From: Tubulanus polymorphus
Lineage: Eukaryota > Animalia > Nemertea
DNA length: 64,000 nt
NCBI RefSeq assembly: GCF_964204645.1
Contig: NC_134030.1
Coordinates: forward strand, 19,924,210-19,988,209
Direction of reading: 5' to 3'
How positions within the stretch are numbered: position 1 is the stretch's first letter; each line of letters starts with the position of its first letter. The notes below the pieces were generated by a model that saw only the letters and a list, made by a program, of their open reading frames with translations, was not told the DNA's origin and made no database searches. Of this stretch, positions 5,521 through 60,866 are shown piece by piece. The translations under genes were made by a program, and so were the position numbers.

Positions 5521-8500
5521 ATGAAAATGGTTTCGGTTCATTTTGTCGTGTTGATGCTGTTCGGTATGGATCGACTGAGAGCGCTGTTTATAGCGTCGCT
5601 GATCGTCTGGCGAGTTAACATCGCACACGCTGATCTGTCTGACTCTGTGACGGTCAGGTCGTCTTGTAATAACACTTGGTACCCCGTCGATTCTACGTCC
5701 GGTTACATCGTTTCACCGAATTACCCGTCGTTAACGCGCGGTGTTGAATGTCGTTGGTTCGTCAACAGCTCTTTACCGGGAACTTTCATCATCAAACTAT
5801 ACTACGACATCGAGCCGTCGATATTCTGTAGTGATAACTACCTTCTCGTCGGTGAGTCCGATAACAAATTCTGCGGTGAAGGAAAACATGAAATCCGCCG
5901 TAACGATTCGATCTCGTTGATGTTTAGAAGTGACGTCGATGGTGCGCGGGGTAGTCGGGTTTATATCATATATCGTTTGGAACGGAACAATTTGAAATTA
6001 ATTCACACCTGCGAAAAATACCATTTAAAAATCAACAAATTAACAACATCGATAGGATACAAGTTTGCTATGTTTCTAAAGCGATGTAAATTGCATTTAG
6101 AATGGATCGGGATCCCGGATGGTTTTGCTATGAATTTCACGTTTTCGCAGATAAAATTCGAATTATATCCCGGCACTGATCCAGCGACAACTGTTCAAAT
6201 TCATGACGGATGGAACAGCAGTGAACTTATTGCTGTAATACCAGAACAAAGTGGGCATCCACCTTCATCCTTTTATAGTAAGACAAACAAAGCTATGATC
6301 AGTTTCCTACTTGGGCGAAACGAAATTACATCACAACTATCAGTTCAGGTGTATAGAATATCTGATTGGAACGTCTCTAATCCGTTAATTCAAATCCCTA
6401 ATAACGAGTCTGGAGTGCTCATCCCTGATGACAACAGTTTACACGTAATAACTCGATCAAAAAACTTACACTGCTGGTCTATCACAGTGCAGGTGTTACA
6501 GTACGTCGTCTTTAACTGGACCCGTGATCTCAGCACATCCGGTGACGTCATTGGTGTATATAAACTAGAAGGGTTACGCGTTGTAGGAACTGATATTTTA
6601 CTCGATTACAACTATCTGGAATCACTGAGTGTTAAATCGGACGGCTTTCTCGTCATACTGTGCGTTTTAATAAGACCAGGTGTTTTACCGTCGAATGTGA
6701 AAATTGGATTTGAAGTGAAATCTATTTCCATAAATGACGTACGAGTGGATAAACGCTTGGTGAGTATTGTGCATTTTAATTTTAAGTTTAGGATTTTATT
6801 GCGTGTGGATCTCTGTTATTAGGTTTCATGCGTTGAGTTTTTGTTAGCGTTCTGGGAATAAATTTAACGTCTTCGAAGCCAACACGAGAAGTTAGGCGCA
6901 CTTGATCTTGGAGATTCAGATACTATGACATGAGTAAAATGACTAATGGGATGAATCAGGTGTTTAATCGGGAGGTAATTTTCGACTAAAATATTTTAGT
7001 TGGAAATAACGATTTATCACCGGTGAAAGAAATTTAATTTAAGCAAATCTAAATTACGAGTTGCTGCTTCACGTGATGAAATCGACACAGATTTGAAAAT
7101 GTTGATATGTAGTTATTACTTTAAAAACAAATGCTGATTTGTTATATTTTGTAGATAGATGATAAAAGATACGGTTTGTCTGCTCAAAATCTGTTGCCAA
7201 GATACACAAACACAAGATTAACGTATCGTATAAATACATTAGAATCTAAACGGAAAGTTGATATCTATGAGAATAGATTGAGACTAACAGTTTTATCAGA
7301 GACGTGCGAGAGAGCTGGATTTTATATATATGACGGTGGTAATTTTACAGCTAGACGCTATGGTCCGTATTGTCCTGGTTATAAATACGGTCGTCACGTC
7401 GCCAGTCTGATTACATCAGGAGGACCGGTTACTGTAGTAGCATACGCTTATAACTGGGATAAAAACTTAATAGTTTATCCAGTGTCGGATCTATTTTTCG
7501 CCCCTACTGATTGTGACGGGTTTGTTCTGCAGGAAGGTGAATATCAGATCAATATGACGTCACACTGTCTCGTGATTACACCTGAAAACCGACGCCTTCC
7601 TTTAGAAAATATTTATATATTATCAGAACACGAATATCAAATTTACACTTGTTCCCGTGGTTTAAATTCGTGTCCTGTTGTTACTCTCACAACTCAATTA
7701 CTGAATAACAGTCTCTTATTGAATCATCTGATGATAAAAGGAAGTAGTTATAGGTTCTGGAGTAATTCAATGATGATTGTACTACGACGTAAATGTTTGG
7801 TGTTGATGATCTATCAAGATTCCCCGGTACTTTCTGCTAATCAATTTGCATACATCACGCCGATGCGAGAAAAATGTGGAGTCGCACAATCACCGGAATA
7901 CCCTGGATATTTTTTTCATCGCGGCAAATCTTTGTACTACTCATTTCATTACGACAAACATTTGAATTACATCAGATTCCTTTTCAAATTCATGGGGCAA
8001 GCCTCGTGCAGCCCTTCTAGTAGTAAAACTGTTCGAGATCTGTTATTACTGGTACAGACTATCTTGAAACCCGGTAATCAGGTAAACAATATGAGGCTGC
8101 GTCGGCACGAGACTAAAATATGTGAAAATAACGCAGTACCTGGACTTTTATTATACAGTCTACTCGGGTATGACCTTTACTTTGAAGCGAAAAACTATAT
8201 ACCTTTATTTCAAATTCAATACACTTTAGAACAATCGCCTTCACAAACACATCGAAATAATGACTGCGGATCAGATTTTCTAGATTCAGGTGTTTCGTGT
8301 ATCAGATACATCAAACATGAACGTCTGAATTGGGAGAACGCTGAAATTTACTGTCAACAGAAATACGGAGGACATCTTCTCAGTATCAACATTGAACAGG
8401 AAATGATTGCCGTAAAAAAACTGTTCGCTACGAAACTTCTTCAGGAGGCGTATTCACAGGCGGCGCTGATTGTGATGATTGGATTGAAATGGCAGGTAAT

Positions 8501-11500
8501 TTCAAAGTATCGTTAAGAACATGTTTACCAAAGTTCATTTAGTTTTGAACATGATTTTGAATTTGTTACGAATTCATTCATTCTCTACTAAAAGTCTAGA
8601 ATCCTTCATATAAATTGAAACAGATTTTTGTTGGTCAACGTGTAAACTGTAACATGATCTTAATTTGATAAACTCAATTCAGACGCTTGATATAAGTTAG
8701 ATATCCAAAAGCTAATCGTCATGAACACTTCTAAAACCATTTCGATCAATGAACCCTTTCACGACCTATCCGGTATGACATACCGGATACAGAAATCACG
8801 GAATAGCCCAGTCCGGATGGCATTTTCTTTCACAGCAGAGTAGATAAACTTATGGAAGTTGTCGTTTACATCTACAGCAGCATCCAGTGAAGCAAAATTA
8901 CAATGGTGATTTTTATTGTGGGTCGTTTGGGGGTCAAATTGCCAGGCCTGGACCAAGCCTGAAAGGCCCCATAAGCTCCCCTGGCGTTAGAAATTATAAA
9001 ACAATTCGCATATGAATGAATAGTCAATTAGACACGAGCTAGATATGTTCTAAATATATTTTGATGGTTTTTACGGTCATAAATAATCGGCAAGGGGGTC
9101 CTCCAGGCATGTGACCTTGACCCTAATTTTTGGGCTTTTCTGGGGTCTTTTGGACCCTTAAAACTTTTTTTTGGCCAAAACTGATCAGAATCAAAAGACT
9201 TACACTATATAGGGACATTAGGTGCATCGATTATAAACATGATATAAGCCCTATTCTGCGAATTTTGGGGTTTTGAAGGTTTTGGGAAAAATGCCCGGGC
9301 CATTAGAGAACATATAGTACGGTCGTGAAAGGTTGAAACTGAATTTATTTTGAACAGGATGATGGTTATTACACGTGGACTGATGGGAAACCATTGAGTT
9401 ACACAGAGTGGTTTAAACCTGCTGTGATAAACGAAACGATACCAGAAGTTATTCAAGGATTGATATCTCCTCTACGAAAACAACCGATAAATGACGTCAA
9501 TATGCCGTGTACGGCGATGATACTGAATAATCCACGAGGATCAGCGAACTGGGTTCGATTCCCGTGTCAAATAGAGGAGACTCGAACAACTTTCATTTGT
9601 GAAAAAGACAACGATAACTCCTCGTCGACTAAAAATCACAAATTACCTGTTGCAGAAGAAAACTATACTTATTATTCGGGGATATTGGAATCAGATAACT
9701 CCACGTGTTTTAAAGGATGGATTGGTATAGAAGGACATTGCTATCAGATACTTACAGCCTGGGATACTCACAGATTGTCAATTCGGGAAGCTGAGGAAAT
9801 GTGTCTTAAAATCGGTGGTGAAATAGGTATAGTATCCAATGATGTTATAATTCAGCATTTGATTCAAATATTTCATTATGAACATCAATACGGTGCTATA
9901 CTGGCGAAGGCTACGGATAGTGAATTTCTTGCTCTGAATCCAGTTTTGACCAGAGATGAAATAACATATAAAAAAACGGTGAAATGGTCAGTGACTGCCT
10001 TTGATAATGTCACAGATGTAGCGCATTCAGTGCTATGTTCCTATAATGTAACTGGTGAAGAGTTGACTTCTATAAAAAGGTGTAAATCGTGGCAATTTGA
10101 ATGTAACGATCAAAGATGTATCAGCGATCATCGCGTATGTGATACCAGAAACGACTGTCAACACGGTGAAGATGAACTCGATTGTTCGGATTCAATCTTG
10201 CGCAGTCAGTTCCACTGTACTGATGAAAGAATTATATCAGTTAGTAATTTGTGTGATTTTGTACGAGATTGCGCTGACGGATCAGATGAGAACTCGTGCT
10301 ATCATACTTCATGTTCCTCTGAACAGTTTAAGTGTAGCAATGGACAATGCGTGGGTAAATATAATCGATGTGATGGACTGGTTGATTGTAAAGATAAATC
10401 TGATGAGATCGGCTGCTCTTCCGATGAATGTAACGGGTTTCTGTGTGTAAATGGAGAATGTATCAGTTCTCTGTTGTATCGGGATGGTGTTGTAGATTGT
10501 GCTGGTAGCCTCGAAGAAGATGAGATTGTCGCCAACATAACAGTTACACCAAAGATTCACTGTACTACAGAGAACTACTGTACGACTAATTTCATAAACT
10601 TATGTAAGAAATCCGAGGAACAAAGATGTTCTTTCGATTCTCCTCACTGTTATTCTAGACGTCACAGATGTATTTTAGAGAGGATGCCGATTGGTTACCC
10701 GGTATGTAGAAGGCTCGAACATATACAAGGTTGTACTGATTTCAAGTGTCCAACTGGTACTGTAAAGTGTCCAGCAACTTACTGTATACCGATGGGACAG
10801 GTGTGCGATGGTCGATCCGATTGTCCTAACTCAGAAGATGAGCGAAACTGCAAGACTTTGTCATGTCCCGGCATGTTTAAGTGTGGCCAGGAAAACAGAT
10901 GCATACCTCAATCTGAAGTTTGTGATGGTGTCGTCATTTGTTTAACATACCACTGATGACGAAGCTTTCTGTGACGTCATATGTCCAAAGGAATGTAAAT
11001 GTCAAGGTCATTTGATTGATTGCGATCATGCTGATTTCGTAGAAATTACTGATCTTTTCTCGGCATCAACTCGAGTTCTGATTTTATCAAGAAACCAAGT
11101 TGTATTCAATGAGTCAACATTTTCTTCGTACCTCTATTTACATTTCCTTAATATTTCACGTAACAATTTGTCTTATATTGTTCCAAACTCGTTCTCAAAC
11201 CTGCATAATCTACATACATTAGATCTTACATATAACCGCATAATATCATTTTCTGCGAATACATTCGCCGGTTTGTATAGTTTGGAAATACTTTTGATTT
11301 TTGGAAATCCAGTGAGATATTTAGAAGAAGGCAGTTTTCAAGGTTTAAAGTCATTAAGCAATCTCGATTTTCACGGACTTTCCTTGTCGTTACTCGATGG
11401 AAATGTGTTCAGTGGTTTATCCGCTTTAGAGTCGTTAAATATCAGCGGTAACGTGATCAAACATATTTCACGAAATGCGTTCTCCGGATTAACAAAACTA

Positions 11501-12589
11501 AGAAATCTGGATCTAACCGAAAATTCTGAAGTCATCTCCGTACAAAGAAACGTTTTTGAAAGTCTTACATTATTGAGTTCTTTGGCTTCTGACGCGTACA
11601 AATTTTGTTGCATGGTTCCGAATGTTGACCGGTGTCTCCCGGAAGCCGACCAATTTTCATCTTGTTCCGACCTTATGGGTAACACTGTTCTTAGAGCAAT
11701 CATTTGGGCGATCGCTTCATTCAGCTTTTTTGCCAACATCATCGTAATTTTACTTCGCGTTCAAGCGTTACGCATTTCATCCTCTGAATCACGTTACATA
11801 TCCTCTGATATCCTAATCATTAATATTGCCACCTGCGATTTTCTCATGTCAATTTATCTTTTTCTGATCGCTGGAGCCGATTACGTCTATAAAGGTGTTT
11901 ATTTCCTCAATTCTGAAATGTGGACAGATAGTTCACTGTGTCGACTCGCTGGGATTTTAGTAACTCTTTCGTGCGAAGGGTCTTTGCTTTTTCTCCTGAT
12001 TCTAACCCGTCAAAGATACTCGAATATCGTCGATCCATTTTCTGGAAGCCCAATTATATCATCGACATATGTGTTCGGTATTTGCTGTATATGCTGGATC
12101 ATTTTGGGCAACATTTCAATGCTACCGTTGTCGTCATCTTCTTATTTCGGACATAACTTTTACGGCACAACTGGTGTTTGTTTACCAATGAATTTACTAT
12201 CCATCGATGTCCACGCCTGGCAATATTCATTCGCTATTTTTGCCGTGTTTAACTCGGTCGTACTTGCTACAATAATGATGACGTATGCACAGATGTATAG
12301 ACTCGTATCTGGAAGCAGGTCCGGCTCGGGTAGAGCAGATCCTACCGAATTGGTTCTGGCGCGTAGGAGTTTAGTGATAAATCTGTGTAATTTATTTTGC
12401 TGGTTACCGATAATTATCGTTCAGTTTTGCGCTGTATTCCGAGTAGAAATACCGAATCAAGTGGCGGCTTGGTTGGCGGTACTTTTCCTACCGATTAACT
12501 CGTCACTGAATCCACTTCTTTACACCATCCTCACTATTGATGTTAAATCTATTCGGGCCAGAAATAAACGCGTTTTGAAAACTCGCTGA
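5521..12589 (+). pseudogene. GRL101-like: Copy 1 CUB-CTL-LDLa-LRR-7TM receptor; +1 frameshift before the LRRs (truncated ectodomain or pseudogene)
   Basis: Exons 5521-6759, 7155-8495, 9358-12589 (GTGAGT/TTTTGTAG, GTAATT/AACAG, all phase 0). Exon 3 is 3232 nt versus 3231 in intact copies. Frameshift at ~10936-10945, stop at 10954-10956. Confidence 0.88.
8754..9333. mobile_element. piggyBac-like non-autonomous element (580 bp) in intron 2 of copy 1
   Basis: TIRs CCCTTTCACGACC / GGTCGTGAAAGGT. 4-bp duplication TGAA at 8750-8753 and 9334-9337. The empty site caaTGAAactg is present in other copies. Confidence 0.8.
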
Positions 12590-19300: not shown

Positions 19301-22300
19301 GATTTTGAATTTGTTACGAATTCATTCATTCTCTACTAAAAGTTTAGAATCTTTCATATTAATTGAAACAGATTTCTATTAGTCAACGTGTAAAATATAA
19401 CATAATCTTAATTTGATAAACTCAATTCGGACGCTTGATATAAGTTAGATATCCAAAAGCTAATCGTCATGAACACTTCTAAAACCATTTCGATCAATGA
19501 AACTGAATTTATTTTGAATAGGGTGATGGTTATTACACGTGAACTGATGGAAAACCATTGAGCTACACAGAGTGGTTTAAACCTACTATAATAAACGAAA
19601 CGATACCAGAAGTTATTCAAGGATTGATATCTCCTCTACGAAAACAACCGATAAATGACGTCAATATGCCGTGTACGGCGATGATTCTGAATAATCCACG
19701 AGGATCAGCGAACTGGGTTCGATTCCCGTGTCAAATAGAGGAGACTCGAACAACTTTCATTTGTGAGAAAGAAAAAGATAACTCTTCATCGACTGAAAAT
19801 CACAAATTACCTGTTGCAGAAGAAAACTATACTTATTATTCGGGGATATTGGAATCAGATAACTCCACGTGTTTTAAGGGATGGATTCGTATAGAAGGAC
19901 ATTGCTATCAGATACTTACAGCTTGGGATACTCACAGATTGTCGATTCCGGAAGCTGAGGAAATGTGTCTTAAAATCGGTGGTGAATTAGGTATAGTATC
20001 CATTGATGTTATAATTCAGCATTTGATTCAAATATTTCATTATGCACATCAATATGGTGCTATACTAGCAAAGGCTACGGATAGTGAATTTCTTGCTCTG
20101 AATCCAGTTCTGACAAGAGATGAAATAACATATATAAAAACGGTGAAATGGTCAGTGACTGCCTTTGATAATGTCACAGATGTCGCGCATTCAGTGCTAT
20201 GTTCCTACAATGTAACTGGTGAAGAGTTGGCTTCTATAAGTAGTTGTCAATCGTGGCAATTTGAATGTAACGATCAAAGATGTATCAGCGATCATCGCGT
20301 ATGTGATACCAGAAACGACTGTCAACACGGTGAAGATGAACTCGATTGTTCAGATTCAAACTGGCGCAGTCAGTTCCACTGTACTGATGGAAGAGTTATA
20401 TCAGTGAGTAATTTGTGTGATTTTGTACGCGATTGCGCTGACGGATCAGATGAGAACTCGTGCTATCATACTTCATGTTCCTCTGAACAGTTTAAGTGTA
20501 GCAATGGACAATGTGTGGGTAAATATAAACGATGTGATGGACTGGTTGATTGTAAAGATAAATCTGATGAGATCGGCTGCTCTTTAGATGAATGTAACGG
20601 GTTTTTGTGTGTAAATGGTGAATGTATCAGTTCTCTGTTGTATCGGGATGGTGTTGTTGATTGTGCTGGTAGCCTTGAAGAAGATGAGATTGTCACCAAC
20701 ATGACAGTTACACCAAAGATTCACTGTACTACAGAGAACTACTGTACGACTAATTTCACAAACCTATGTAAGAAATCCGATGAACAAAGATGTTCTTTCG
20801 ATTCTCCTCATTGTTATTCTAGACGTCACAGGTGTATTTTAGAAAGGATGCCGATTGGTTACCCGGTATGTAGAAGGCTCGAACATATACAAGGTTGTAC
20901 TGATTTCAAATGTCCAGCTGGTGCTGCAAAATGTCCAGCATCTTACTGTATACCGATGGGACAGGTGTGCGATGGTCGATCCGATTGTCCTAACTCAGAA
21001 GATGAGCGAAACTGCAAGACTTTGTCATGTCCTGGCATGTTAAAGTGTGGCCAGGAAAACCGATGCATACCTCAATCTGAAGTTTGTGATGGTGTCGTCA
21101 ATAAACCATTTTACAGTTGCTAGCCGCCATTTTGTTAGGGTACTTTTGTCCTGTATTGTTGGGTCATTAGTTTCTCCTTTTTAAAAACTATTTGTGATGC
21201 GTGTTTTATCATATCTCATCTGTCCCTCGATAGATTTTGACAGTTTTTGCAACATTCAAACCGTGTGAATCTCTAGTTTTCAGTTATGCAAAGATCATTT
21301 TTCAAATTTGCAACAATGCGACATGAGAGCGATATAGAAATCGGTGGTCGGTTTTTGCTGCACGCATAAAAATCCAGGGTACTGAAATTTGAAGTTCATT
21401 ATTTTCAGAAATTATTTTCTAAAAAATCCAAACATTTCGAGAACTGTGCGCATAAACGCCCCCTTTCAAGTGAACTTTAAAATCTTAAGATATCTTGCCT
21501 AGTTTTTATCCTATGGCTCTTTAACTACAGCGCGTGTATTGTCATTCCGGGTTTCGGCGCTGTTTTCTATGCGTGTATTTCAGTATATCGGTGTTATTTT
21601 TTTCATTTTTACTACACTTGTCTCCACGGAAAATGGTTTTAATTGTTGGTACGAGTATCAGCTTTAAATATTACGTCATTTATGCAATATTCAGAGACAT
21701 GAGAGATTTTTGGGTTTTAAAGATTTTTCTCACGATTCAGCAGCAGAGACTGAGCGGCATTTTGATCACGCGCCCATTCGAAGTTACACGCGGGAAGAGA
21801 ATATATAGGCCTATATTGAGATGGAAGAAGAAAACAAATATAACACTCAAAATCGAGTATGATGACCATTTAATTCAGTAGTCCATTAATCAATGTACAC
21901 TATCCACTGAAATTAGATGGATGGAGAAGTGGTCAAAAAGCTGGACATATGGGGGGATATTCAGCTACTTTCTATGAATACTTTCTATAAAGTACACACA
22001 AGATTGATTAGATCGGGGAAAAAAATATAAGAAAGCGTTTTCTTGTTTTGGTGGTGAAATATCAAGTATCAAGTCTGAATGGCAGACACAGGTGATTAAA
22101 AGTAAAAAGTGACATCTACCATCACCAAAAACGCAAGAAGTGTGTGGATTGCATTTACAACAAAATAGTGATATTTGGGGTTTTCTTGGGTGCATGTACG
22201 TAAGCCTCGGCCTGCAGTAAAAGCGGCTACCATTACAGGCATTACGAACTAGCGCCGTTAAAAGAGAACGGAATGGAGTATTAATGACGTAATATTTAAA

Positions 22301-41460: not shown

Positions 41461-42687
41461 ATGAAAATGGTTTCGGTTCATTTTGTTGTGTTGATGCAGT
41501 TCGGTATGGATCGACTGAGAGCGCTGTTTATAGCGTCGCTGATCGTCTGGCGAGTTAACATCGCACACGCTGATCTGTCTGACTCTGTGACGGTCAGTTC
41601 GTCTTGTAACAACACTTGGTACCCCGTCGATTCTACGTCCGGTTACATCGTTTCACCGAATTACCCGTCGTTAACGCGCGGTGTTGAATGTCGTTGGTTC
41701 GCCAACAGCTCTTTACCGGGGACTTTCAACATCAAACTATACTACGACATCGAGCCGTCGATATTCTGTAATGATAACTACCTTCTCGTCGGTGAGTCCG
41801 ATAACAGATTCTGCGGTGAAGGAAAACATGAGATCCGCCGTAACGATTCGATCTCGTTGATGTTTAGAAGTAACGTCGATGGTGCGTGGGGTAGTCGGGT
41901 TTATATCACATATCGTTTAGAACGGAACAATTTGAAATTAATTCACACCTGCGCAAAATACAACGAATTACCAACATCGATAGGATACAAGTTTGCTATG
42001 TTGGTAAAGCAATGTAAATTGTATTTGGAATGGATCGGGATCCCGGATGGCTTTGCTATGAATTTCACGTTTTCGGATATAAAATTCGAATTACACCCCG
42101 GCACTGATCCAGAGAAAACTGTTCAAATTCATGACGGATGGAACAGCAGTGAACTTATTGCTGTAATACCTGAACAAAGCGGGCATCCACCTTCATCCTT
42201 TTATACTAAGACAAACAAAGCTATGATCAGTTTCCTACGTGTGCGAAACGTACTTACATCACAACTATCAGTTCAGATCTATAGAATCTCTGAATGGAAC
42301 GTCTCTAATCCGTTAATTCAAATCTCTAATAACGAGTCTGGGGTGCTCATTCCTGATGACAACAGTTTACACGTAATAACTCGATCAAAACACTTACACT
42401 GCTGGTCTATCACAGTGCAGGTGTTACAGTACGTCGTCTTCAACTGGGCACGTGATCTCAGCACATCCGGCGACGTCATTGGTGTATATAAACTAGAAGG
42501 GTTACGCGTTGTAGGAACTGATATTTTACTCGGTTACAACTACCTGGAATCACTGAGTGTTAAATCTGACGGCTTTCTCGTCATACTGTGCGTTTTAATA
42601 AGACAAGGTGTTTTACCGTCGAATGTGAAAATTGAATTTGAAGTGAAATCTATTTCCATAAAAGACGTACGAGTGGATAAACCCTTG
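41461..42687 (+). CDS. Copy 4 exon 1 (12-bp in-frame deletion versus other copies)
   Basis: ORF 41443-42750; donor GTGAGT at 42688. Confidence 0.85.
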
Positions 42688-45600
42688 GTGAGTATTGTGC
42701 GTTTTAATTTTAAGTTTATGATTTTATTGTGTGTGGATCTCTGTTATTAGGTTTCATCCGTAGAGTTTATGTTTGTGTTCTGAGAATAAAGTGAAAGTCT
42801 TCGAAGCCAACACGAGAAGTTACGCGCACTTTTTCTTGGAGATCCAGATACTATAACTGCATGTTTAAACGATTATTGGGATGATTTAGGGTGGTTTTTT
42901 TCAACGAAAATACTTTATTGGGAAATTTGGATTTTTCCACCTGAAGAAGATATTTCATTTTAGCAAATCTTAAAACGTGGCAAAATCATAACTCGAGATA
43001 GATTTGAAAATGCTTTTATGTTATTAATACTTAATAAAACGAATGCTGATTTGTTATATTTTGTAGATATCTGGTAACAGAAACAGCTACCGCTTGCCTG
43101 CTCAAAGATTGTTCCCGACGACAAAGAAGACAACATTATCGTATCGCATAAATACATTAGAATTTAAACAGAAAGTTGATATCTATGATGATGGATTGAG
43201 ATTAGCAGTTTTATCAGAGACGTGCGAGAGAGCTGGATTTTATATATATGATGGTGGTAATTTTACAGCTAGACGCTATGGTCCGTATTGTCCTGGTTAT
43301 GAATACAGTCGTAACGTCGTCAGTCTGATTACATCAGGAGGACAGGTTACTGTAGTAGGATACGCTTATAATGAACCTAAATCTGGGTCTCTCGGATTCA
43401 ATCCTACTGACTGTGACGGGTATGTTTTACAGGAAGGTGAAAATCAGATCAATATGACGTCACACTGCCTCACGATTACACCTGAAAACCGGCGCCTTCA
43501 TTTAGAAAATATTTATATATTATCAGAACACGAATATCAAATTTACACTTGTTCCCGTGGTTCAAATTCGTGTCCTGATGTTACTTTTACAACTCAATTA
43601 CTGAATAACAGTCTCTTATTGAATCATCTGATGATAAAAGGAAATAGTTATAGGTTCTGGAGAAGTTCAATGATGATTGTACTACGACGTAAATGTTTGG
43701 TGTTGATGATCTATCAAGATTCCCCGGTAGTTACTGCTAGTAGTTTTGCATACGTCCCGCCGATGCGAGAAAAATGTGGAGTCGCACAATCACCGAACTA
43801 TCCTCGATATTTTACACAACGCGGCAAATCTTTGTACTACTCATTTCATTACGACAAACATTTGAATTATTACATCAGATTCCTTTTCAAATTTATGGGA
43901 CACGCCTCGTGCAGCCCTTCTAGTAGTAATGCTGTTCGAGACCTGTTATTACTGGTACAGAGTATTTTTAAACCCGGTAGTGTTTTACTCCTTGTGGGGC
44001 TGCGTCGCCACGAGACTAAAATATGTGAAAATAACGCAGTACCGGGACTTGTATTGTACAGTCTACTCGGGTATGACGTTTACTTTGAAGCGAATAACTA
44101 TATCCCTTTATTTCAAATTCAATACACTTTACAACAATCGCCTTCACAAACACATCGAAATAATGACTGCGGATCAGATTTTCTAGATTCAGGTGTTTCG
44201 TGTATAAGATACATCAAACATGAACGTCTGAATTGGGAGAACGCTGAAATTTACTGTCAACAGAAATACGGTGGACATCTTCTCAGTATCAACTCTGAAC
44301 AGGAAATGATTGCTGGAAAAAAACTGTTCGCTACGAAACTTCTGCAGGAGGCGTATTCACAAGCGGCGCTGATTGTGATGATTGGATTGAAATGGCAGGT
44401 AATTTCAAATTATCGTTATGAACATGTTTACCAACATTCATTTAGTTTTGAACATGATTTTGAATTTGTTACGAATTCATTCATTCTCTACTAAAAGTTT
44501 AGAATCTTTCATATTAATTGAAACAGATTTCTATTAGTCAACGTGTAGAATATAACATAATCTTAATTTGATAAACTCAATTCAGACGCTTGATATAAGT
44601 TAGATATCCTAAAGCTAATCGCCATGAACACTTCTAAAACCATTTCGATCAATGAAACTGAATTTATTTTGAACAGGATGATGGTTATTACACGTGGACT
44701 GATGGAAAACCATTGAGCTACACAGAGTGGTTTAAACCTACTATAATAAACGAAACGATACCAGAAATTATTCAAGGATTGATATCTCCTCTACGAAAAC
44801 AACCGATAAATGACGTCAATATGCCGTGTACGGCGATGATACTGAATAATCCACGAGGATCAGCGAACTGGGTTCGATTCCCGTGTCAAATCGAGGAAAC
44901 TCGAACAACTTTCATTTGTGAGAAAGACAAAGATAACTCCTTATCTACTAACAATCACAAATTACCTGTTGTAGAAGAAAACTCTACTTATTATTCGGGG
45001 ATATTGAAATCAGTTAACTCCACGTGTTTAAAGGGATGGATTGGTATAGGAGGACATTGCTATCAGATACTTACAGCCTGGGATTCTCACAGATTGTCAA
45101 TTCGGGAAGCTGAGAAAATGTGTCTTAAAATCGGTGGTGAAATAGGTATAGTATCAAATGATGTTATAATTCAGCATTTGATTCAAATATTTCATTATGA
45201 ACATCAATATGGTGCTATACTGGCGAAGGCTACGGATAGTGAATTTCTTGCTCTGAATCCAGTTTTGACCAGAGATGAAATAACATATAAAAAAACGGTG
45301 AAATGGTCAGTGACTGCCTTTGATAATGTCACAGATGTAGCGCATTCAGTGCTATGTTCCTACAATGTAACTGGTGAAGAGTTGACTTCTATAAAAAGGT
45401 GTAAATCGTGGCAATTTGAATGTAACGATCAAAGATGTATCAGCGATCATCGCGTATGTGATACCAGAAACGACTGTCAACACGGTGAAGATGAACTCGA
45501 TTGTTCGGATTCAATCTTGCGCAGTCAGTTCCACTGTACTGATGAAAGAATTATATCAGTTAGTAATTTGTGTGATTTTGTACGAGATTGCGCAGACGGA

Positions 45601-47907
45601 TCAGATGAGAACTCGTGCTATCATACTTCATGTTCCTCTGAACAGTTTAAGTGTAGCAATGAACAATGTGTGGGTAAATATAATCGATGTGATGGACTGG
45701 TTGATTGTAAAGATAAATCTGATGAGATCGGCTGCTCTTCAGATGAATGTAACGGGTTTCTGTGTGTAAATGGTGAATGTATCAGTTCTCTGTTGTATCG
45801 GGATGGCGTTGTAGATTGTGCTGGTAGCCTCGAAGAAGATGAGATTGTCACCAACATAACAGTTACACCAAAGATTCACTGTACTACAGAGAACTACTGT
45901 ACGACTAGTTTCACAAACTTATGTAAGAAATCCGATGAACAAAGATGTTCTTTCGATTCTCCTCATTGTTATTCTAGACGTCACAGGTGCATTTTAGAAA
46001 GGATGTCGATTGGTTACCCGGTATGTAGAAGGCTCGAACATATACAAGGTTGTACTGATTTCAAATGTCCAGCTGGTGCTGCAAAATGTCCAGCATCTTA
46101 CTGTATACCGATGGGACAGGTGTGCGATGGTCGATCCGATTGTCCTAACTCAGAAGATGAGCGAAACTGCAAGACTTTGTCATGTCCTGGCATGTTTAAG
46201 TGTGGCCAAGAAAACCGATGCATACCTCAATCTGATATTTGTGATGGTGTCGTCAATTGTAAACATACCACCGATGACGAAGCGTTCTGTGACGTCATAT
46301 GTCCAAAGGACTGTAAATGTCAAGGTCATTTGATAGATTGCGATCATGCTGGTTTCGTAGAAATTACTGATCTTTTCTCGGCATCAACTCGAGTTCTGAT
46401 TTTGTCAAGAAACCAAGTTGTATTCAATGAGTCAACATTTTCTTCGTACCTCTATTTACATTTCCTTAATATTTCACGTAACAATTTGTCTTATATTGTT
46501 CCAAACGCGTTCTCAAACCTGCATAATCTACATACATTAGATCTTACCTATAACCACATAATATCATTTACCGAGAATACATTCGCCGGTTTGTATAGTT
46601 TGAAAAAACTTTTGTTTTTTGGAAATCCAGTGAGATATTTAAAAGAAGGCAGTTTTCATGGTTTAAAGTCATTGAGCGATCTCGATCTTCACGGACTTTC
46701 CTTGTCGTTACTCGGTGGAAATGTGTTCAGTGGTTTATCCGCTTTAGAGTCGTTAAATGTCAGCAGTAACGTGATCAAATATATTTCACCAAATGCGTTC
46801 GCCGGATTAACAAAACTAAGAAATCTGGATCTAACCAAAAATTCTGAAGTCATATCCGTACAAAGAAACGTTTTTGACAGTCTTACATTATTGAGTTCTT
46901 TGGCTTCTGACGCGTACAAATTTTGTTGCATGGTTCCGAATGTTGACCAGTGTCTCCCGGAAGCCGACCAATTTTCATCTTGTTCCGACCTGATGGGTAA
47001 CACTGTTCTTAGAGCAATCATTTGGGCGATCGCTTCATTCAGCTTTTTTGCCAACATAATCGTAATTTCACTCCGCGTTCAAGCGTTACGCATTTCATCC
47101 TCTGAATCACGTAACATATCCTCTGATATCCTAATCATTAATATTGCCACCTGCGATTTTCTCATGTCAATTTATCTTTTTCTGATCGCTGGAGCCGATT
47201 ACGTCTATAAAGGTGTTTATTTCCTCAATTCCGAAATGTGGACAGATAGTTCACTGTGTCGACTCGCTGGGATTTTAGTAACTCTTTCGTGCGAAGGGTC
47301 TTTGCTTTTTCTCCTGATTCTAACCCGTCAAAGATACTCGAATATCGTCGATCCATTTTCTGGAAGCCCAATTATATCATCGACATATGTGTTCGGTATT
47401 TGCTGTATATGCTGGATCATTTTGGGCAACATTTCAATGCTACCGTTGTCGTCATCTTCTTATTTCGGACATAACTTTTACGGCACAACTGGTGTTTGTT
47501 TACCAATGAATTTACTATCCATCGATGTCCACGCCTGGCAATATTCATTCGCTATTTTTGCCGTGTTTAACTCGGTCGTACTTGCTACAATAATGATGAC
47601 GTATGCACAGATGTATAGACTCGTATCTGGAAGCAGGTCCGGCTCGGGTAGAGCAGATCCTACCGAATTGGTTCTGGCGCGTAGGAGTTTAGTGATAAAT
47701 CTGTGTAATTTATTTTGCTGGTTACCGATAATTATCGTTCAGTTTTGCGCTGTATTCCGAGTAGAAATACCGAATCAAGTGGCGGCTTGGTTGGCGGTAC
47801 TTTTCCTACCGATCAACTCGTCACTGAATCCACTTCTTTACACCATCCTCACTATTGATATTAAATCTATTCGGGCCAGAAATAAACGCGTTTTGAAAAC
47901 TCGCTGA
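41461..47907 (+). CDS. GRL101-like: Copy 4, intact GRL101-like LGR, ~1929 aa
   Basis: Exons 41461-42687, 43067-44398, 44677-47907 total 5790 nt, all phase 0 and open, with the same domain order as copy 3. Confidence 0.9.
43067..44398 (+). CDS. Copy 4 exon 2
   Basis: Acceptor TTTTGTAG ends at 43066; donor GTAATT at 44399. Confidence 0.88.
44677..47907 (+). CDS. Copy 4 exon 3
   Basis: Acceptor AACAG ends at 44676, in frame with the 1064-aa ORF. Confidence 0.92.
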   Translation, partial: DDGYYTWTDGKPLSYTEWFKPTIINETIPEIIQGLISPLRKQPINDVNMPCTAMILNNPRGSANWVRFPCQIEETRTTFICEKDKDNSLSTNNHKLPVVEENSTYYSGILKSVNSTCLKGWIGIGGHCYQILTAWDSHRLSIREAEKMCLKIGGEIGIVSNDVIIQHLIQIFHYEHQYGAILAKATDSEFLALNPVLTRDEITYKKTVKWSVTAFDNVTDVAHSVLCSYNVTGEELTSIKRCKSWQFECNDQRCISDHRVCDTRNDCQHGEDELDCSDSILRSQFHCTDERIISVSNLCDFVRDCADGSDENSCYHTSCSSEQFKCSNEQCVGKYNRCDGLVDCKDKSDEIGCSSDECNGFLCVNGECISSLLYRDGVVDCAGSLEEDEIVTNITVTPKIHCTTENYCTTSFTNLCKKSDEQRCSFDSPHCYSRRHRCILERMSIGYPVCRRLEHIQGCTDFKCPAGAAKCPASYCIPMGQVCDGRSDCPNSEDERNCKTLSCPGMFKCGQENRCIPQSDICDGVVNCKHTTDDEAFCDVICPKDCKCQGHLIDCDHAGFVEITDLFSASTRVLILSRNQVVFNESTFSSYLYLHFLNISRNNLSYIVPNAFSNLHNLHTLDLTYNHIISFTENTFAGLYSLKKLLFFGNPVRYLKEGSFHGLKSLSDLDLHGLSLSLLGGNVFSGLSALESLNVSSNVIKYISPNAFAGLTKLRNLDLTKNSEVISVQRNVFDSLTLLSSLASDAYKFCCMVPNVDQCLPEADQFSSCSDLMGNTVLRAIIWAIASFSFFANIIVISLRVQALRISSSESRNISSDILIINIATCDFLMSIYLFLIAGADYVYKGVYFLNSEMWTDSSLCRLAGILVTLSCEGSLLFLLILTRQRYSNIVDPFSGSPIISSTYVFGICCICWIILGNISMLPLSSSSYFGHNFYGTTGVCLPMNLLSIDVHAWQYSFAIFAVFNSVVLATIMMTYAQMYRLVSGSRSGSGRADPTELVLARRSLVINLCNLFCWLPIIIVQFCAVFRVEIPNQVAAWLAVLFLPINSSLNPLLYTILTIDIKSIRARNKRVLKTR

Positions 47908-54340: not shown

Positions 54341-57300
54341 ATGGTTTCGGTTCATTCTGTCGTGTTGATGCTGTTCGGTATGGATCGACTGAGAGCGCTG
54401 TTTATAGCGTCGCTGATCGTCTGGCGAGTTAATATCGCACACGCTGATCTGTCTGACTCTGTGACGGTTTGTTCGTCTTGTAACAACACTTGGTACCCCG
54501 TCGATTCTACGTCCGGTTACATCGTTTCACCGAATTACCCGTCGTTTACGCGAGGTGTTGAATGTCGTTGGTTCGTCAACAGCTCTTTACCGGGAACTTT
54601 CAACATCAAACTATACTACGACATCGAGCCGTCGATATTCTGTAGTGATAACTATCTTCTCGTCGGTGAGTCCGATAACAAATTCTGCGGTGAAGGAAAA
54701 CATGAAATCCGCCGTAACGATTCGATGTCGTTGATGTTTAGAAGTAACGTCGATGGTGCGCGGGGTAGTCGGGTTTATATCATATATCGTTTAGAACGGA
54801 ACAATTTGAAATTAATTCAAACCTGCGCAAGATACGGTTTAAAAATCAACAAATTACCAACATCGATAGGATATAAGTTTGCTTTGTTGGTATGGCAATG
54901 TAAATTGTATTTAGAATGGATCGGGATCCCGAGTGGGTTTGCTATGAATTTCACGTTTTCGCAGATAGAATTCCAATTATATCCCGGCACTGATCCAGCG
55001 ACAACTGTTCAAATTCATGACGGATGGAACAGCAGTGAACTTCTTGCTGTAATACCAGAACAAACCGGACATCCACCGTCATCATTCTATACTAAAACTA
55101 ACAAAGCTATGATCAGTTTGCCACGTGGGCGAAACGTACTTACATCACAATTATCAGTTCAAGTGTATAGAATATCAGATTGGAACGTCTCTAATCCGTT
55201 AATCCAAATCTCTAATAACGAGTCTGGAGTGCTCATTCCTGATGACAACAGTTTACACGTAATAATTCGATCAAAACACTTACACTGCTGGTCTATCACA
55301 GTGCAGGTGTTACAGTACGTCGTCTTCAACTGGACACGTGATCTCAGCACATCCGGTGACGTCATTGGTGTATATAAACTAGAAGGGTTACGCGTTGTAG
55401 GAACTGATATTTTACTCGGTTACAACTACCTGGAATCACTGAGTGTTAAATCTGACGGCTTTCTCGTCATACTGTGCGTTTTAATAAGACCAGGTGTTTT
55501 ACAATCGAATGTGAAAATTGAATTTGAAGTGAAATATATTTCCATAAAAGACGTACGAGTGGATAAACACAGGGTGAGCATTGTGCGTTTTAATTTAAAG
55601 TTTATGATTTTATTGTGTGTGGATCTCTGTTATTAGGTTTCATGCGTAGAGTTTATGTTTGTGTTCTGAGAATAAAGTGAAAGTCTTCGAAGCCGACACG
55701 AGAAGTTACGCGCACTTTTTCTTGGAGATCCAGATACTATAACTGCATGTTTAAACGATTATTGGGATGATTTAGGGTGGGTTTTTTTTCAACTAAAATA
55801 CTTTATTGCGAAATTTTGATTTTCCACCTGAAGAAGAAATTTCATTTTAGCAAATCTTAAAACACGAATTGCTGCACGTGACAAAATCATTAATCGCAAA
55901 GATTTGGAAATGTTGTTATGTTATTAATACATAAAAAAGAAATGCTAATTTGTTATATTTTGTAGATATCTGGTAACAGATACAGATACGGTTTGTTTGT
56001 TCAAAATCTGTTCCCGACGACGAAGAAGACAACATTATCGTATCGCATAAATACATTAGAATTTAAACGGAAAGTTGATATCTATGAGGATGGATTAAAA
56101 CTAACAGTATTATCAGAGACGTGCGAGAGAGCTGGATTTTATATATATGATGGTGGTAATTTTACAGCTAGACGCTATGGTCCGTATTGTCCTGGTTATA
56201 AATATGGTCGTAACGTCGTCAGTCTGATTACATCAGGAGAACCGGTTACTGTAGTAGCATACGCTTATAACTGGGATAGAAAGTTAATAGTTAATCCGGT
56301 GTCATATCTAACATTCGCCCCTACTGATTGTGACGGGTATGTTCTGCAGGAAGGAGAAAATCAGATCAATATGACGTCACACTGCCTCACGATTACACCT
56401 GAAAACCGGCGCCTTCCTTTAAAAAATATTTATATAATATCAGAACACGAATATCAAATTTACACATGTTTCCGTGGTTTAAATTCGTGTCCTGATGTTA
56501 CTTTTACAACTCAATTACTGAATAACAGTCTCTTATTGAATCATCTGATGATAAAAGGAAGTAGTTATAGGTTCTGGAGTAGTTCACTGATGATTGTACT
56601 ACGACGTAAATGTTTGGTGTTGATGATCTATCAAGATTCCCCGGTACTTTCCTCTAATCAAATTGCATACATCCCGCCGAAGCGAGAAAAATGTGGAGTC
56701 GCACAATCACCGGAATACCCTGGATATTTTCCTCAACGCGGCAAATCTTTGTATTACTCATTTCATGACGACAAACATTTGAATTATTACATCAGATTCC
56801 TTTTCAAATTTATGGGGCAAGCCTCGTGCAGCCCTTCTAGTAGTTATACTATTCGAGATCTGTTATTACTGGTACAGACTATTTTGAAACCCGGTAGTTG
56901 GGGAATCCATATGCGTCGTCACGAGACTAAAATATGTGAAAATAACGCTGTACCTGGACTTGTATTGTACAGTCTACTCGGGTATGACCTTTACTTTGAA
57001 GCGAAAAACTATATCCCTTTATTTCGAATTCAATACAATTTAGAACAATCGCCTTCACAAACACATCGAAATAATGACTGCGGATTAGATTTTCTAGATT
57101 CAGGTGTTTCGTGTATCAGATACATCAAACATGAACGTCTGAATTGGGAGAACGCTGAAATGTACTGTCAACAGAAATACGGAGGACATCTTCTCAGTAT
57201 CAACTCTGAACAGGAAATGATTGCTGTAAAAAAACTGTTCGCTACGAATCTTCTTCAGGAGGCGTATTCACAGGCGGCGCTGATTGTGATGATTGGATTG

Positions 57301-60300
57301 AAATTGCAGGTAAAATTGCATTGCTGAATTGCATTGATTGATTGGAGGTAATTTCAAAGTATCGTTATGAACATGTTTACCAACATTCATTTAGTATTGA
57401 ACATGATTTTGAATTTGTTACCAATTCATTCATTCTCTACTAAAAGTCTAGAATCTTTCATATTAATTGAAACAGATTTCTATAAATCAACGTGTAAAAT
57501 GTAACATGATCTTAATTTGATAAACTCAATTCAGACGCTTGATATAAGTTAGATATCCAAAAGCTAATCGTCATGAATCGTCATGAACACGTCTAAAACC
57601 ATTTCGATCAATGAAACTGAATTTATTTTGAACAGGATGATGGATATTACACGTGGACTGATGGGAAACCATTGAGCTACACAGAGTGGTTTTAACCTGC
57701 TGTGATAAACGAAACGATACCAGAAGTTATTCAAGGATTGATATCTCCTCTAAGAAAACAACCGATAAATGACGTCAATATGCCGTGTACGGCGATGATT
57801 CTGAATAATCCACGAGGATCAGCGAACTGGGTTCGATTCCCGTGTCAAATCGAGGAGACTCGAACAACTTTCATTTGTGAAAAAGACAAAGATAACTCCT
57901 CATCGACTAAAAATCACAAATTACCTGTTGCAGAAGAAAACTCTACTTATTATTCGGGGATATTGGAATCAGATAACTCCACCTGTTTTAAAGGATGGAT
58001 TGGTTTAAAAGGACATTGCTATCAGATACTTACAGCCTGGGATACTCACAGATTGTCAATTCGGGAAGCTGAGGAAATGTGTTTTAAAATCGGTGGTGAA
58101 TTAGGTATAGTATCCAGTGATATTATATTCAGCATTTGATTCAAATATTTCATTATGAACATCAATATGGTACTATACTGGCGAGGACTACGGATAGTGA
58201 ATTTCTTGCTCTGAATCCAGTTTTGACCAGAGATGAAATAACATATAAAAAAAACGGTGAAATGGTCAGTGACTGCCTTTGATAATATCACAGATGTAGC
58301 GCATTCAGTGTTATGTTCCTACAATGTAAGTGGTGAAGAGTTGGCTTCTATGAGTGGTTGTAAATCGTGGCAATTTGAATGTAACGATCAAAGATGTATC
58401 AGCGATCATCGCGTATGTGATACCAGAAACGACTGTCAACACGGTGAAGATGAACTCGATTGTTCAGATTCAAACTGGTGCAGTCAGTTCCACTGTACTG
58501 ATGGAAGAGTTATATCAGTGAGTAATTTGTGTGATTTTGTACGAGATTGCGCTGACGGATCAGATGAGAACTCGTGCTATCATACTTTATGTTCCTCTGA
58601 ACAGTTTAAGTGTAGCAATGGACAATGTGTGGGTTTATATAATCGATGTGATGGACTGGTTGATTGTAAAGATAAATCTGATGAGATCGGCTGCTCTTCC
58701 GATGAATGTAACGGGTTTCTGTGTGTAAATGGTGAATGTATCAGTTCTCTGTTGTATCGGGATGGTGTTGTAGATTGTGCTGGTAGCCTCGAAGAAGATG
58801 AGATTGTCACCAACGTAACAGTTACACCAAAGATTCACTGTACTACAGAGAACTACTGTACGACTAATTTCACAAACTTATGTAAGGAATCCGATGAACA
58901 AAGATGTTCTTTCGATTCTCCTCACTGTTATTCTAGACGTCACAGGTGTATTTTAGAAAGGAGGCCGATTGGTTACCCGGTATGTAGAAGGCTCGAACAT
59001 ATACAAGGTTGTACTGATTTCAAATGTCCAGCTGGTGCTGCAAAATGTCCAGCATCTTACTGTATACCGATGGGACAGGTGTGCGATGGTCGATCCGATT
59101 GTCCTAACTCAGAAGATGAGCGAAACTGCAAGACTTTGTCGTGTCCCGGCATGTTTAAATGTGGCCATGAAAACCGATGCATACCTCAATCTGAAGTTTG
59201 TGATGGTGTCGTCAATTGTATACATACCACTGATGACGAAGCTTTCTGTGACGTCATATGTCCAAAGGAATGTAAATGTCAAGGTCATTTGATTGATTGC
59301 GATCATGCTGATTTCGAAGAAATTACTGATCTTTTCTCGGCATCAACTCGAGTTCTGATTTTATCAAGAAACCGAGTTGTATTCAATGAGTCCACATTTT
59401 CTTCGTACCTCTATCTACATTTCCTTAATATTTCACGTAACAATTTGTCTTATATTGTTCCAAACTCGTTCTCAAACCTGCATAATCTACATACATTAGA
59501 TCTAGCTTATAACCGCATAATATCATTTTCCGCGAATACATTCGCCGGTTTGTATAGTTTGAAAATGCTTTTGATTTTTGGAAATTCAGTGAGATATTTA
59601 GAAGAAGGCAGTTTTCATGGTTTAAAGTCATTAAGCGATCTCGATCTTCACGGACTTTCCTTGTCGTTACTCGGTGGAAATGTGTTCCGTGGTTTATCAG
59701 CTTTAGAGTCGTTAAATATCAGCAGTAACGTGATCAAATATATTTCACCAAATGCGTTCGCCGGATTAACAAAACTAAGAAATCTGGATCTAACCAAAAA
59801 TTCTGAAGTCATATCCGTACAAAGAAACGTTTTTGACAGTCTTATATTATTGAGTTCTTTGGCTTCTGACGCGTACAAATTTTGTTGCATGGTTCCGAAT
59901 GTTGATCAGTGTCTCCCGGAAGCCGACCAATTTTCATCTTGTTCCGACCTGATGGGTAACACTGTTCTTAGAGCAATCATTTGGGCGATCGCTTCATTCA
60001 GCTTTTTTGCCAACATCATCGTAATTTTACTTCGCGTTCAAGCGTTACGCATTTCATCCTCTGAATCACGTAACATATCCTCTGATATCCTAATCATTAA
60101 TATTGCCACCTGCGATTTTCTCATGTCAATTTATCTTTTTCTGATCGCTGGAGCCGATTACGTCTATAAAGGTGTTTATTTCCTCAATTCTGAAAGGTGG
60201 ACAGATAGTTCACTGTGTCGACTCGCTGGGATTTTAGTAACTCTTTCGTGCGAGGGGTCTTTGCTTTTTCTCCTTATTCTAACCCGTCAAAGATACTCGA

Positions 60301-60866
60301 ATATCGTCGATCCATTTTCTGGAAGCCCAATTATATCATCGACATATGTGTCCGGTATTTGCTGTATATGCTGGATCATTTTGGGCAACATTTCAATGCT
60401 ACCGCTGTCGTCATCTTCTTATTTCGGACATAACTTTTACGGCACAACTGGTGTTTGTCTACCAATGAATTTACTATCCATCAATGTCCACGCCTGGCAA
60501 TATTCATTCGCTATATTTACCGTGTTTAACTCGGTCGTACTTGCTACAATAATGATGACGTATGCACAGATGTATAAACTCGTATCTGGAAGCAGGTCCG
60601 GCTCGGGTAGAGCTGATCCTACCGAATTGATTCTGGCACGTAGGAGTTTAGTGATAAATCTGTGTAATTTATTTTGCTGGTTACCGATAATTATCGTTCA
60701 GTTTTGCGCTGTATTCCGAGTCGAAATACCGAACCAAGTGGCGGCTTGGTTGGCGGTACTTTTCCTACCGATCAACTCGTCACTAAATCCACTTCTTTAC
60801 ACCATCCTCACTATTGATATTAAATCTATTCGGGCCAGAAATAAACGCGTTTTGAAAACTCGCTGA
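54341..60866 (+). pseudogene. GRL101-like: Copy 5 receptor; exons 1-2 open, early stop and compensating frameshifts in exon 3
   Basis: Exons 54341-55573, 55966-57309, 57636-60866. AAA>TAA at 57693-57695, -1 at ~58126, +1 in the A-run at ~58250. The first ATG is changed to ACG (54335). Confidence 0.82.

What the first reader, a model, noticed from the sequence alone, without database searches (positions are those of the whole stretch)
5521..60866. Tandem cluster of giant CUB-lectin-LDLa-LRR GPCRs built as variable sensor + constant signalling module
Seen: at least six head-to-tail copies of a three-exon ~1935-aa receptor that adds CUB-like and C-type-lectin-like domains in front of an LDLa-LRR-7TM core. 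The 7TM differs by only a handful of residues between copies, while the N-terminal exons differ much more. Known: LDLa-repeat + LRR + 7TM defines the orphan GRL101/type C2 LGRs, and CUB, CTL and LRR domains are common in innate recognition. Inference: a diversifying immune, symbiont-recognition or chemosensory receptor family feeding one invariant G-protein output. I cannot tell whether this architecture or expansion is already described in this taxon.
Basis: partly seen in the sequence, partly recalled or inferred. Interest (0 to 1): 0.85.

Follow-up and report, generated by a model that had tools for sequence, protein, structure and literature searches.

The report
Ribbon-worm giant receptor gene array
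A ribbon worm carries about 300-370 copies of a gene for a giant cell-surface receptor, in which a few outer loops vary while the part that signals into the cell is kept nearly identical, a larger version of receptor expansions already published in snails.

Summary
Real, but over-counted and over-simplified. The interval holds five three-exon genes (a sixth is only a 3' tail at 280-456). Two are intact (1,925 and 1,914 aa); three are broken in exon 3. They belong to a 21-copy tandem array (17 open) and a family of roughly 300-370 genes in the genome of Tubulanus polymorphus (99% match to its RefSeq protein). Architecture: signal peptide, CUB1 (Pfam), up to five more CUB-like modules (weaker support), two lectin-like folds, about seven LDLa, LRR and a type C LGR 7TM. 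RXFP1 is the closest solved structure; its hinge and ECL2 activation motifs are kept. 'Variable sensor, constant signaller' holds only partly. Variable patches alternate with outer modules that are near-identical across chromosomes. Family-wide the 7TM drifts to about 81%, while ICL3-TM6 stays near-invariant. Synonymous diversity follows the same pattern and segment genealogies are uncorrelated, which points to gene conversion. Positive selection is suggestive only. No RNA was available; splicing and function are untested. CTL-LDLa-LRR GRL101 clusters (Biomphalaria) and 29-132-gene expansions (apple snails) are published. The scan found this family before on other DNA of this genome.

The parts
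280..456 (+). 3' end (TM6-TM7, stop) of the preceding array copy, cut off from the rest of its gene by a transposon that ends at window 279
5566..12589 (+). Copy A: exons 5566-6759, 7155-8495, 9358-12589; +1 frameshift at ~10941 (end of LDLa), ORF ends at 1,377 aa
16389..24497 (+). Copy B: exons 16389-17582, 17909-19243, 19522-24497; TGA at 19540, transposon 21103-22859, 14-nt deletion ~24094
21103..22859 (.). 1,757-bp non-autonomous DNA transposon with ~580-bp terminal inverted repeats, inserted at AA|TT; about 38 near-full-length copies among the 40 scored in the genome
28279..34732 (+). Copy C, intact, 1,925 aa: exons 28279-29472, 29871-31223, 31502-34732
28279..28344 (+). Copy C signal-peptide-like N-terminus (22 aa; by inspection, no predictor run), ATG conserved in 21/21 copies
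28345..28698 (+). CUB domain 1 (Pfam CUB; PDB match MASP-3/C1s CUB); conserved module
28699..29103 (+). Exon 1 middle module, CUB-like by language-model features; most variable part of exon 1
29104..29472 (+). Exon 1 third module, CUB-like; a 161-nt part is 96-98% identical in DNA in paralogs on C6 and C12
29871..30980 (+). Exon 2 modules (two with CUB-type motifs plus one between them); hypervariable, indel-rich patches in an invariant frame
30981..31771 (+). C-type-lectin-like domain 1, split by intron 2; no canonical EPN/QPD/WND sugar motif seen
31772..32221 (+). Second, degenerate lectin-like domain (Pfam UL45 CTL-like, E 0.002)
32222..33121 (+). LDLa repeats (5-6 Pfam matches plus degenerate repeats, about 7)
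33122..33781 (+). LRRNT, about 7 LRRs and a short type C hinge
33782..34732 (+). Hinge end, rhodopsin-type 7TM and short C-tail; RXFP1-like ECL2; ICL3-TM6 (34424-34584) homogenised across the family
41506..47907 (+). Copy D, intact, 1,914 aa: exons 41506-42687, 43067-44398, 44677-47907
54380..60866 (+). Copy E: exons 54380-55573, 55966-57309, 57636-60866; TAA at 57693, -1 at ~58126, +1 at ~58247

Best explanation
A lineage-specific, tandemly amplified family (~300-370 genes) of type C LGRs with a GRL101-like core and an added CUB/lectin-like stalk, used as a germline-encoded set of sensors for extracellular macromolecules. Shown: architecture, copy number, mosaic history, conserved activation motifs. 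Inferred, signalling: as in RXFP1, the LRR and hinge hold the receptor off and ECL2 acts as a built-in agonist; a ligand bound at the variable outer loops relieves this, and the copies couple through a near-identical ICL3-TM6 face to one G-protein pathway. Inferred, evolution: unequal crossing-over multiplies and shuffles copies and gene conversion homogenises most of the gene, while the specificity loops resist conversion and form divergence peaks; some copies die. Role (not shown): sensing of external chemical or protein cues about 40%, immune or parasite recognition about 30%, other self/non-self or gamete recognition about 15%, no recognition role about 15%.
For: Best PDB match RXFP1, E 2e-78, with the hinge serine and leucine, the ECL2 motif before and after the disulfide cysteine, D2.50, W6.48 and NPxxY aligned; these residues drive RXFP1 activation (bioRxiv 10.1101/2022.01.22.477343), and hinge, ECL2 and NPxxY show no amino-acid variation among the 13 array copies profiled. 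17/21 copies keep a ~5.8-kb open frame; dN/dS 0.3 in 7TM and LDLa. Exon-2 indels all keep frame. Hot 7-codon windows pN/pS 1.24 against 0.62 elsewhere; M1a-M2a strongest in exon 2. Segment distance matrices barely correlate; identical tracts of 0.4-1.6 kb link changing partners; 7TM and 3' flank (1.5-1.8%) are less diverged than introns (5-10%). Divergence peaks under conversion are a published sign of selection (PMC3924837). Precedents for both roles: PMC6573481, PMC12297450.
Against: No expression or splice evidence. No module has whole-domain dN/dS clearly above 1; the tree-free test is not significant (p = 0.08) and the site test is also positive in 7TM and LDLa, where recombination can fake it. 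Four of 21 copies are broken. Folds of five modules are not proven (AlphaFold pLDDT 28-32). Some outer modules are more constant than the 7TM, which a pure variable-sensor model does not predict. No ligand is known for any GRL101-type receptor (PMC11863921 calls GRL101 orphan).
Confidence: 0.6

Rival explanations
1. Largely neutral expansion: a conversion-prone tandem repeat amplified by drift or dosage; the variable patches are surface loops under relaxed constraint, and all copies do the same job (for example binding one insulin-like peptide or secreted protein).
For: dN/dS near 1 rather than above 1 in exon-2 modules (0.85-0.95; pN/pS 0.75-1.02); synonymous diversity rises with nonsynonymous diversity; transposons and Polinton-like elements sit in the array; GRL101 has been proposed as an IGF receptor (PMC8286064).
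Against: The same narrow patches carry 4-7 residues and frame-keeping indels between invariant stretches; hundreds of ~6-kb frames are kept on several chromosomes; canonical GRL101 is single-copy in ambulacrarians, and other LGRs closer to an outside multi-LDLa LGR exist apart from this family.
Confidence: 0.2
2. Arms-race immune receptor family that recognises parasites or microbes through the lectin-like and CUB domains, like the Biomphalaria SudRes2 cluster.
For: CTL, CUB and LRR content; birth-and-death with mosaic copies; site-model signal in exon 2 and the second lectin-like domain; a 12-gene CTL-LDL-LRR GRL101 cluster lies in a schistosome-resistance locus (PMC12297450).
Against: The first lectin-like domain is among the least variable parts and lacks canonical sugar motifs; the selection signal is weak; in Biomphalaria the top variants lie in a neighbouring non-GRL101 gene; apple-snail and Charonia GRL101s are tentacle-expressed; Srw-type chemoreceptor-like genes sit inside this array.
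Confidence: 0.25
3. Assembly artefact: the copies are stacked haplotypes of a few genes.
For: Four consecutive genes at C6 19.81-19.86 Mb are 99.9-100% identical to four at 20.05-20.09 Mb.
Against: The other 17 copies differ by 1-6% in the closest pairs over the gene and 5-10% on average in introns, with different insertions; a diploid gives two haplotypes, not 17; three DNA runs hold many distinct variants; the family spans at least six large contigs.
Confidence: 0.03

Closest known systems
Biomphalaria sudanica SudRes2 GRL101-like cluster (PMC12297450)
   Same: Dense tandem cluster (12 genes in under 0.5 Mb) of CTL + LDLa + LRR + 7TM receptors, with copy gain, loss and truncation between haplotypes.
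   Different: No CUB modules reported; 12 genes against 21 locally and ~300-370 genome-wide here; orthology not shown (the molluscan CTL-type receptors form their own clade).
Ampullariid GRL101 expansion (PMC6573481)
   Same: Lineage-specific tandem expansion of GRL101-type GPCRs (29-132 genes per genome), many expressed in tentacles and palps.
   Different: Two to three times fewer genes; no CUB/CTL stalk or block-wise conversion mentioned in the passage read; expression is known there and not here.
Lymnaea GRL101 / type C2 LGRs (PMC8286064, PMC11863921, PMC4079206)
   Same: Multiple LDLa + LRR + short hinge + 7TM; orphan.
   Different: Canonical GRL101 has 12 LDLa and 6 LRR and is single-copy in ambulacrarians; here about 7 LDLa and 7 LRR, about 1,050 extra N-terminal residues, a long 7TM branch and hundreds of copies.
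RXFP1 (PDB 7TMW; bioRxiv 10.1101/2022.01.22.477343)
   Same: Closest solved structure; hinge, ECL2, D2.50, W6.48 and NPxxY aligned.
   Different: One N-terminal LDLa, relaxin ligand; 33% 7TM identity to a mammalian RXFP1; ECL2 Phe is Leu here and the TM3 triplet reads QRY.
Database proteins from echinoderms and molluscs (Diadema P0021, Asterias P0036, Haliotis P0004, Aplysia P0024)
   Same: CUB + LDLa + LRR + 7TM (Diadema, also with a lectin-like stretch; Asterias) or CTL + LDLa + LRR + 7TM (Haliotis, Aplysia) in single annotated proteins.
   Different: 1,100-1,400 aa, 28-36% 7TM identity; exons 1-2 here have no detectable sequence homologs beyond CUB1 and the lectin start.

Membership tests
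LGR (leucine-rich-repeat rhodopsin GPCR) | LRR ectodomain, hinge and rhodopsin 7TM in one polypeptide | tested here: met
   All lie in the single 1,081-codon open frame of exon 3; top PDB hits RXFP1, LGR4, FSHR.
Type C LGR | LDLa module(s) N-terminal to the LRRs; short hinge; 7TM groups with type C | tested here: met
   LDLa x5-6; hinge aligns to RXFP1 almost without gaps; falls in the 29-row clade with RXFP1 and GRL101-like rows (100/99) away from two outgroup LGRs.
Type C2 / GRL101-like (architecture) | Multiple LDLa repeats | tested here: met
   About 7 repeats in exon 3; region matches LDLa arrays of GRL101-like database proteins.
GRL101 orthology group | 7TM forms a clade with Lymnaea GRL101 and orthologs, apart from type C1 | tested here: inconclusive
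   Long branch, unresolved inside type C; a clade with four molluscan GRL101-like proteins is neither found nor rejected (p-AU 0.11); the best tree joins RXFP1 with support 38/83, a long-branch join; Lymnaea GRL101 was not in the set.
Signalling-competent class A GPCR | Seven TM helices, D2.50, TM3-ECL2 disulfide, R3.50, CWxP, NPxxY | tested here: met
   Motifs aligned to RXFP1; TM3 triplet is QRY; six helices pass the hydropathy cut-off used, TM7 is placed by homology. Coupling not assayed.
CUB domain | Sequence or fold match | tested here: inconclusive
   Met for CUB1 (Pfam E 9e-6; MASP-3 E 1e-5). For the other five modules only language-model features (0.92-0.95 to CUB clusters) and motif inspection; AlphaFold failed and hhalign gave nothing.
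C-type lectin (sugar-binding) | CTLD fold plus Ca2+/sugar motifs EPN or QPD and WND | tested here: not met
   Fold signature present but no EPN, QPD or WND in either domain of copy C: lectin-like fold, sugar binding not supported.
Diversifying recognition receptor family | Positive selection concentrated at ligand-facing sites | tested here: inconclusive
   M1a-M2a significant in exon-2 modules (p 1e-6 to 1e-14) but also in 7TM and LDLa; tree-free pN/pS 1.24, p = 0.08.
Diversifying recognition receptor family | Expression in sensory or immune cells; ligand discrimination | not testable with these tools
   No RNA run holds the locus.

The most novel reading that the evidence does not exclude
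A germline repertoire of 300+ GPCRs in which CDR-like loops on CUB modules are reshuffled by gene conversion against a fixed frame and a fixed G-protein face, expressed one or a few per cell, so that cell identity rather than receptor output encodes what was sensed (as for odorant receptors or protocadherins, but for macromolecules); exon-3-broken copies could supply secreted forms.
Probability: 0.15. Interest if true: 0.8.

Novelty: new variant of a known kind. Interest (0 to 1): 0.45.

Why it matters
GRL101-type receptors are orphans that have expanded repeatedly in invertebrates and are linked to chemosensation in apple snails and starfish and to a schistosome-resistance locus in Biomphalaria. 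This nemertean family is larger than any I found published (about 300-370 against up to 132), has only three exons, and shows sharply bounded variable patches on a near-constant signalling face. That makes it a good system to map where these receptors bind ligand and to test whether the expansions are sensory or immune. It is not a new class of receptor, and the scan has already recorded it in other windows of this genome.

Tried and rejected
RNA support: one run search and one laying of 5,901 letters (27900-33800). X1-X3 cover the introns and show no join at either intron, so they behave as DNA; X4 (possibly RNA, 2015) laid nothing, which proves nothing. AlphaFold on exon 1 and exon 2 gave pLDDT 32 and 28, so no fold search was run. 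hhalign against a starfish CUB region and between exons found nothing. Homolog searches with exon 1 and with exon 2 residues 1-370 were blank (length window 0.55-1.75x, so no proof of novelty); the 1.84-billion-protein search with exon 2 hit only its lectin start. Rejected: 'six copies in the interval'; the first ATG as start (lost in most copies); mis-stacked haplotypes for the window; an invariant 7TM across the family (81-84% for C9 and C12 genes); sugar-binding lectins.
Full report
Observation. The window is a tandem repeat of a 10-13 kb unit. Each unit holds three long open frames on the + strand. Mapping copy C's exons shows five copies (A-E) inside 5521-60866 and a 177-nt 3' tail of a sixth at 280-456. 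The C-type-lectin-like domain begins in exon 2 and continues in exon 3, which supports intron 2 independently. Intron 1 rests on conserved splice sites and frame only. The ATG at 28234 is ACG or lost in most copies, whereas the ATG 45 nt later (28279) is present in 21 of 21 and opens a 22-residue signal-peptide-like stretch (by inspection). From it C is 1,925 aa and D 1,914 aa. A, B and E are broken in exon 3; single-base indels could be consensus errors, but B's transposon and the nonsense codons are less likely to be.

Organism and family size. The best database hit of the LRR-7TM part is a Tubulanus polymorphus RefSeq protein, and it matches this genome at 99%, so the source is that nemertean or a very close relative (267.8 Mb, 77 contigs). 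The window lies in an array of exactly 21 copies with at least 97% identity in TM2-TM3, after which identity drops to 91%. I fetched the other 16: 17 of 21 have open frames of 1,914-1,925 aa. Own-genome searches give 373 candidates for exon 1, 367 for exon 2, 507 for the 7TM (which includes other LGRs), and 308 and 327 for two conserved DNA blocks, in clusters on C6, C9, C12, C8, C10, C11 and C4. These are candidate counts, not gene counts; about 300-370 is my estimate. Four genes at 19.81-19.86 Mb are 99.9-100% identical to four at 20.05-20.09 Mb, a very recent duplication or an assembly artefact; the remaining 17 are clearly distinct.

Anatomy. Pfam gives CUB in exon 1, the start of Lectin_C in exon 2, and LDLa, LRR and 7tm_1 in exon 3, with a second degenerate lectin-like stretch. 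The remaining ~600 residues of exons 1-2 have no sequence homolog but resemble CUB clusters by language-model features (0.92-0.95) and show CUB-type motifs, so up to six CUB-like modules are likely but only the first is shown. AlphaFold failed on the shallow alignments. Neither lectin-like domain has EPN, QPD or WND. The LRR-7TM part is closest to RXFP1 among solved structures (E 2e-78): the short hinge, the ECL2 segment around the disulfide cysteine, D2.50, W6.48 and NPxxY align. In RXFP1 these hinge and ECL2 residues are needed for activation, ECL2 fills the orthosteric pocket, and the LRRs inhibit (bioRxiv 10.1101/2022.01.22.477343). Trees place the family among type C LGRs on a long branch and cannot separate C1 from C2.

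Variable and constant parts. Across 17 non-redundant copies dN is 0.010 in the 7TM and 0.074 in exon 2, but dS follows (0.033 against 0.10, and 0.245 in the middle of exon 1). The 7TM (1.5%) and the 120 nt after the stop (1.8%) are less diverged than the introns (4.9% and 9.8%), distance matrices of different segments barely correlate, and identical tracts of 0.4-1.6 kb link changing pairs. Copy C is nearest to A in exon 1, to its upstream neighbour in exon 2 and most of exon 3, and to yet another copy in the 7TM. This is a mosaic made by unequal exchange and conversion. Family-wide the pattern is blocks, not halves. A piece of exon 1's third module is 96-98% identical in DNA in genes on C12 and distant C6 whose exon 1 is about 71% identical in protein, while the neighbouring module falls to 77% within 40 hits. 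ICL3-TM6 is at least 98% identical in DNA in genes whose 7TM is 83% identical and identical in protein in a C9 paralog, whereas TM2-TM3 falls to 85%. Summed contig depth in three DNA runs shows the same alternation, high over CUB1, the third module, the first lectin-like domain and the first LDLa repeats (a rough indicator only).

Selection. In exon 2 and mid exon 1 variation sits in short patches with 4-7 alternative residues and frame-keeping indels. My M1a-M2a test is strongly positive there (omega2 about 3-7, 5-17% of sites) but also positive in LDLa and 7TM, and recombination inflates it. A tree-free count of distinct variants gives pN/pS 1.24 in the most variable fifth of windows (p = 0.08 against 1) and 0.62 in the rest. 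So the patches are at least unconstrained and probably favoured; divergence peaks that include synonymous sites amid conversion are a published signature of selection keeping paralogs different (PMC3924837). A rapid arms race is not shown.

How it most likely works. Shown: receptor architecture, conserved activation motifs, mass duplication, block-wise homogenisation. Inferred: each receptor binds an extracellular macromolecule through the variable patches; binding releases LRR-hinge inhibition so that ECL2 activates the 7TM; copies share one G-protein pathway. The constant outer modules may be a structural frame or bind a shared partner. I put external chemical or protein sensing at about 40%, immunity 30%, other recognition 15% and no recognition role 15%. 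Srw-type chemoreceptor-like genes inside the array are a weak hint for the first.

Comparison with what is known. Multi-LDLa LGRs are type C2/GRL101, orphan (PMC11863921, PMC4079206). A 12-gene CTL-LDL-LRR cluster lies in a schistosome-resistance region of Biomphalaria sudanica (PMC12297450); apple snails have 29-132 GRL101 genes, many tandem and tentacle-expressed (PMC6573481); Ciona has its own LDLa-GPCR expansion (PMC2396169). CUB- or CTL-bearing LDLa-LRR GPCRs are annotated in Diadema, Asterias, Haliotis and Aplysia. I found no paper on this family in nemerteans, within a library that lacks most subscription journals. What differs here is the size of the family, the long CUB-like stalk, the three-exon design and the block-wise conversion. 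The scan has reported the same family from several other windows of this genome; those notes are not independent evidence.

Limits. No RNA evidence either way. Distant paralogs could not be fetched. Polinton-like stretches in the array were only observed.

Verdict. Real; a new, larger variant of a known kind of invertebrate receptor expansion; function untested. Interest 0.45.

Noticed in passing
window 21103-22859; also L008:8531 to window 279: 1,757-bp non-autonomous DNA transposon with ~580-bp terminal inverted repeats; both array insertions are at AA|TT (a 2-bp AT duplication, or none). About 38 near-full-length copies among the 40 scored, four at ~100% identity, so recently active; no transposase ORF found.
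   Followed up: partly
window 1142-1459, 35908-36190, 48597-48914, 61551-61868 (- strand); L020:1822-2808, 4942-5934, 6830-7780: Fragments of Srw-type chemoreceptor-like GPCR genes ride in several spacers (66-92% identical to two intact single-frame Srw-like genes inside the array at C6 20.03 Mb); a third, distant 7tm_1 gene lies beside them.
   Followed up: partly
L017-L019 (C6 19.87-19.89 and 19.99-20.00 Mb): Two ~29-kb gaps in the array hold AT-rich (24-32% GC), ORF-dense DNA; L018 has a weak major-capsid match and an rve integrase, consistent with the Polintons noted by other readers. Observed only.
   Followed up: partly
L001-L004 against L011-L014: A four-gene block of about 45 kb recurs 232 kb downstream at 99.9-100% identity: very recent duplication or assembly artefact.
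   Followed up: partly
window copies A, B, E and L008: All four broken copies have their first lesion in the last exon, so truncated secreted forms could escape decay; exon 3 is 56% of the frame, so four of four has p about 0.1.
   Followed up: partly
window 8752-9335: About 580-bp insertion in intron 2 of copy A, with short inverted ends; splice acceptor kept.
   Followed up: no
G000 C9:2.85-2.93 Mb, C6:21.00 and 21.32 Mb: Some paralogs have 7TM-containing open frames of 1,460-1,610 codons; in one (C9:2.852 Mb) exon 2 lies in the same frame, so intron 2 reads through without a stop or is absent.
   Followed up: no
G000 C1:8.14 Mb, C4:0.85 Mb, C1:28.25 Mb, C5:7.76 Mb, C7:17.89 and 2.30 Mb, C10:2.03 Mb: Further LGR 7TMs in frames of 1,030-1,140 codons that score higher than this family against an outside multi-LDLa LGR; candidates for less derived relatives.
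   Followed up: no
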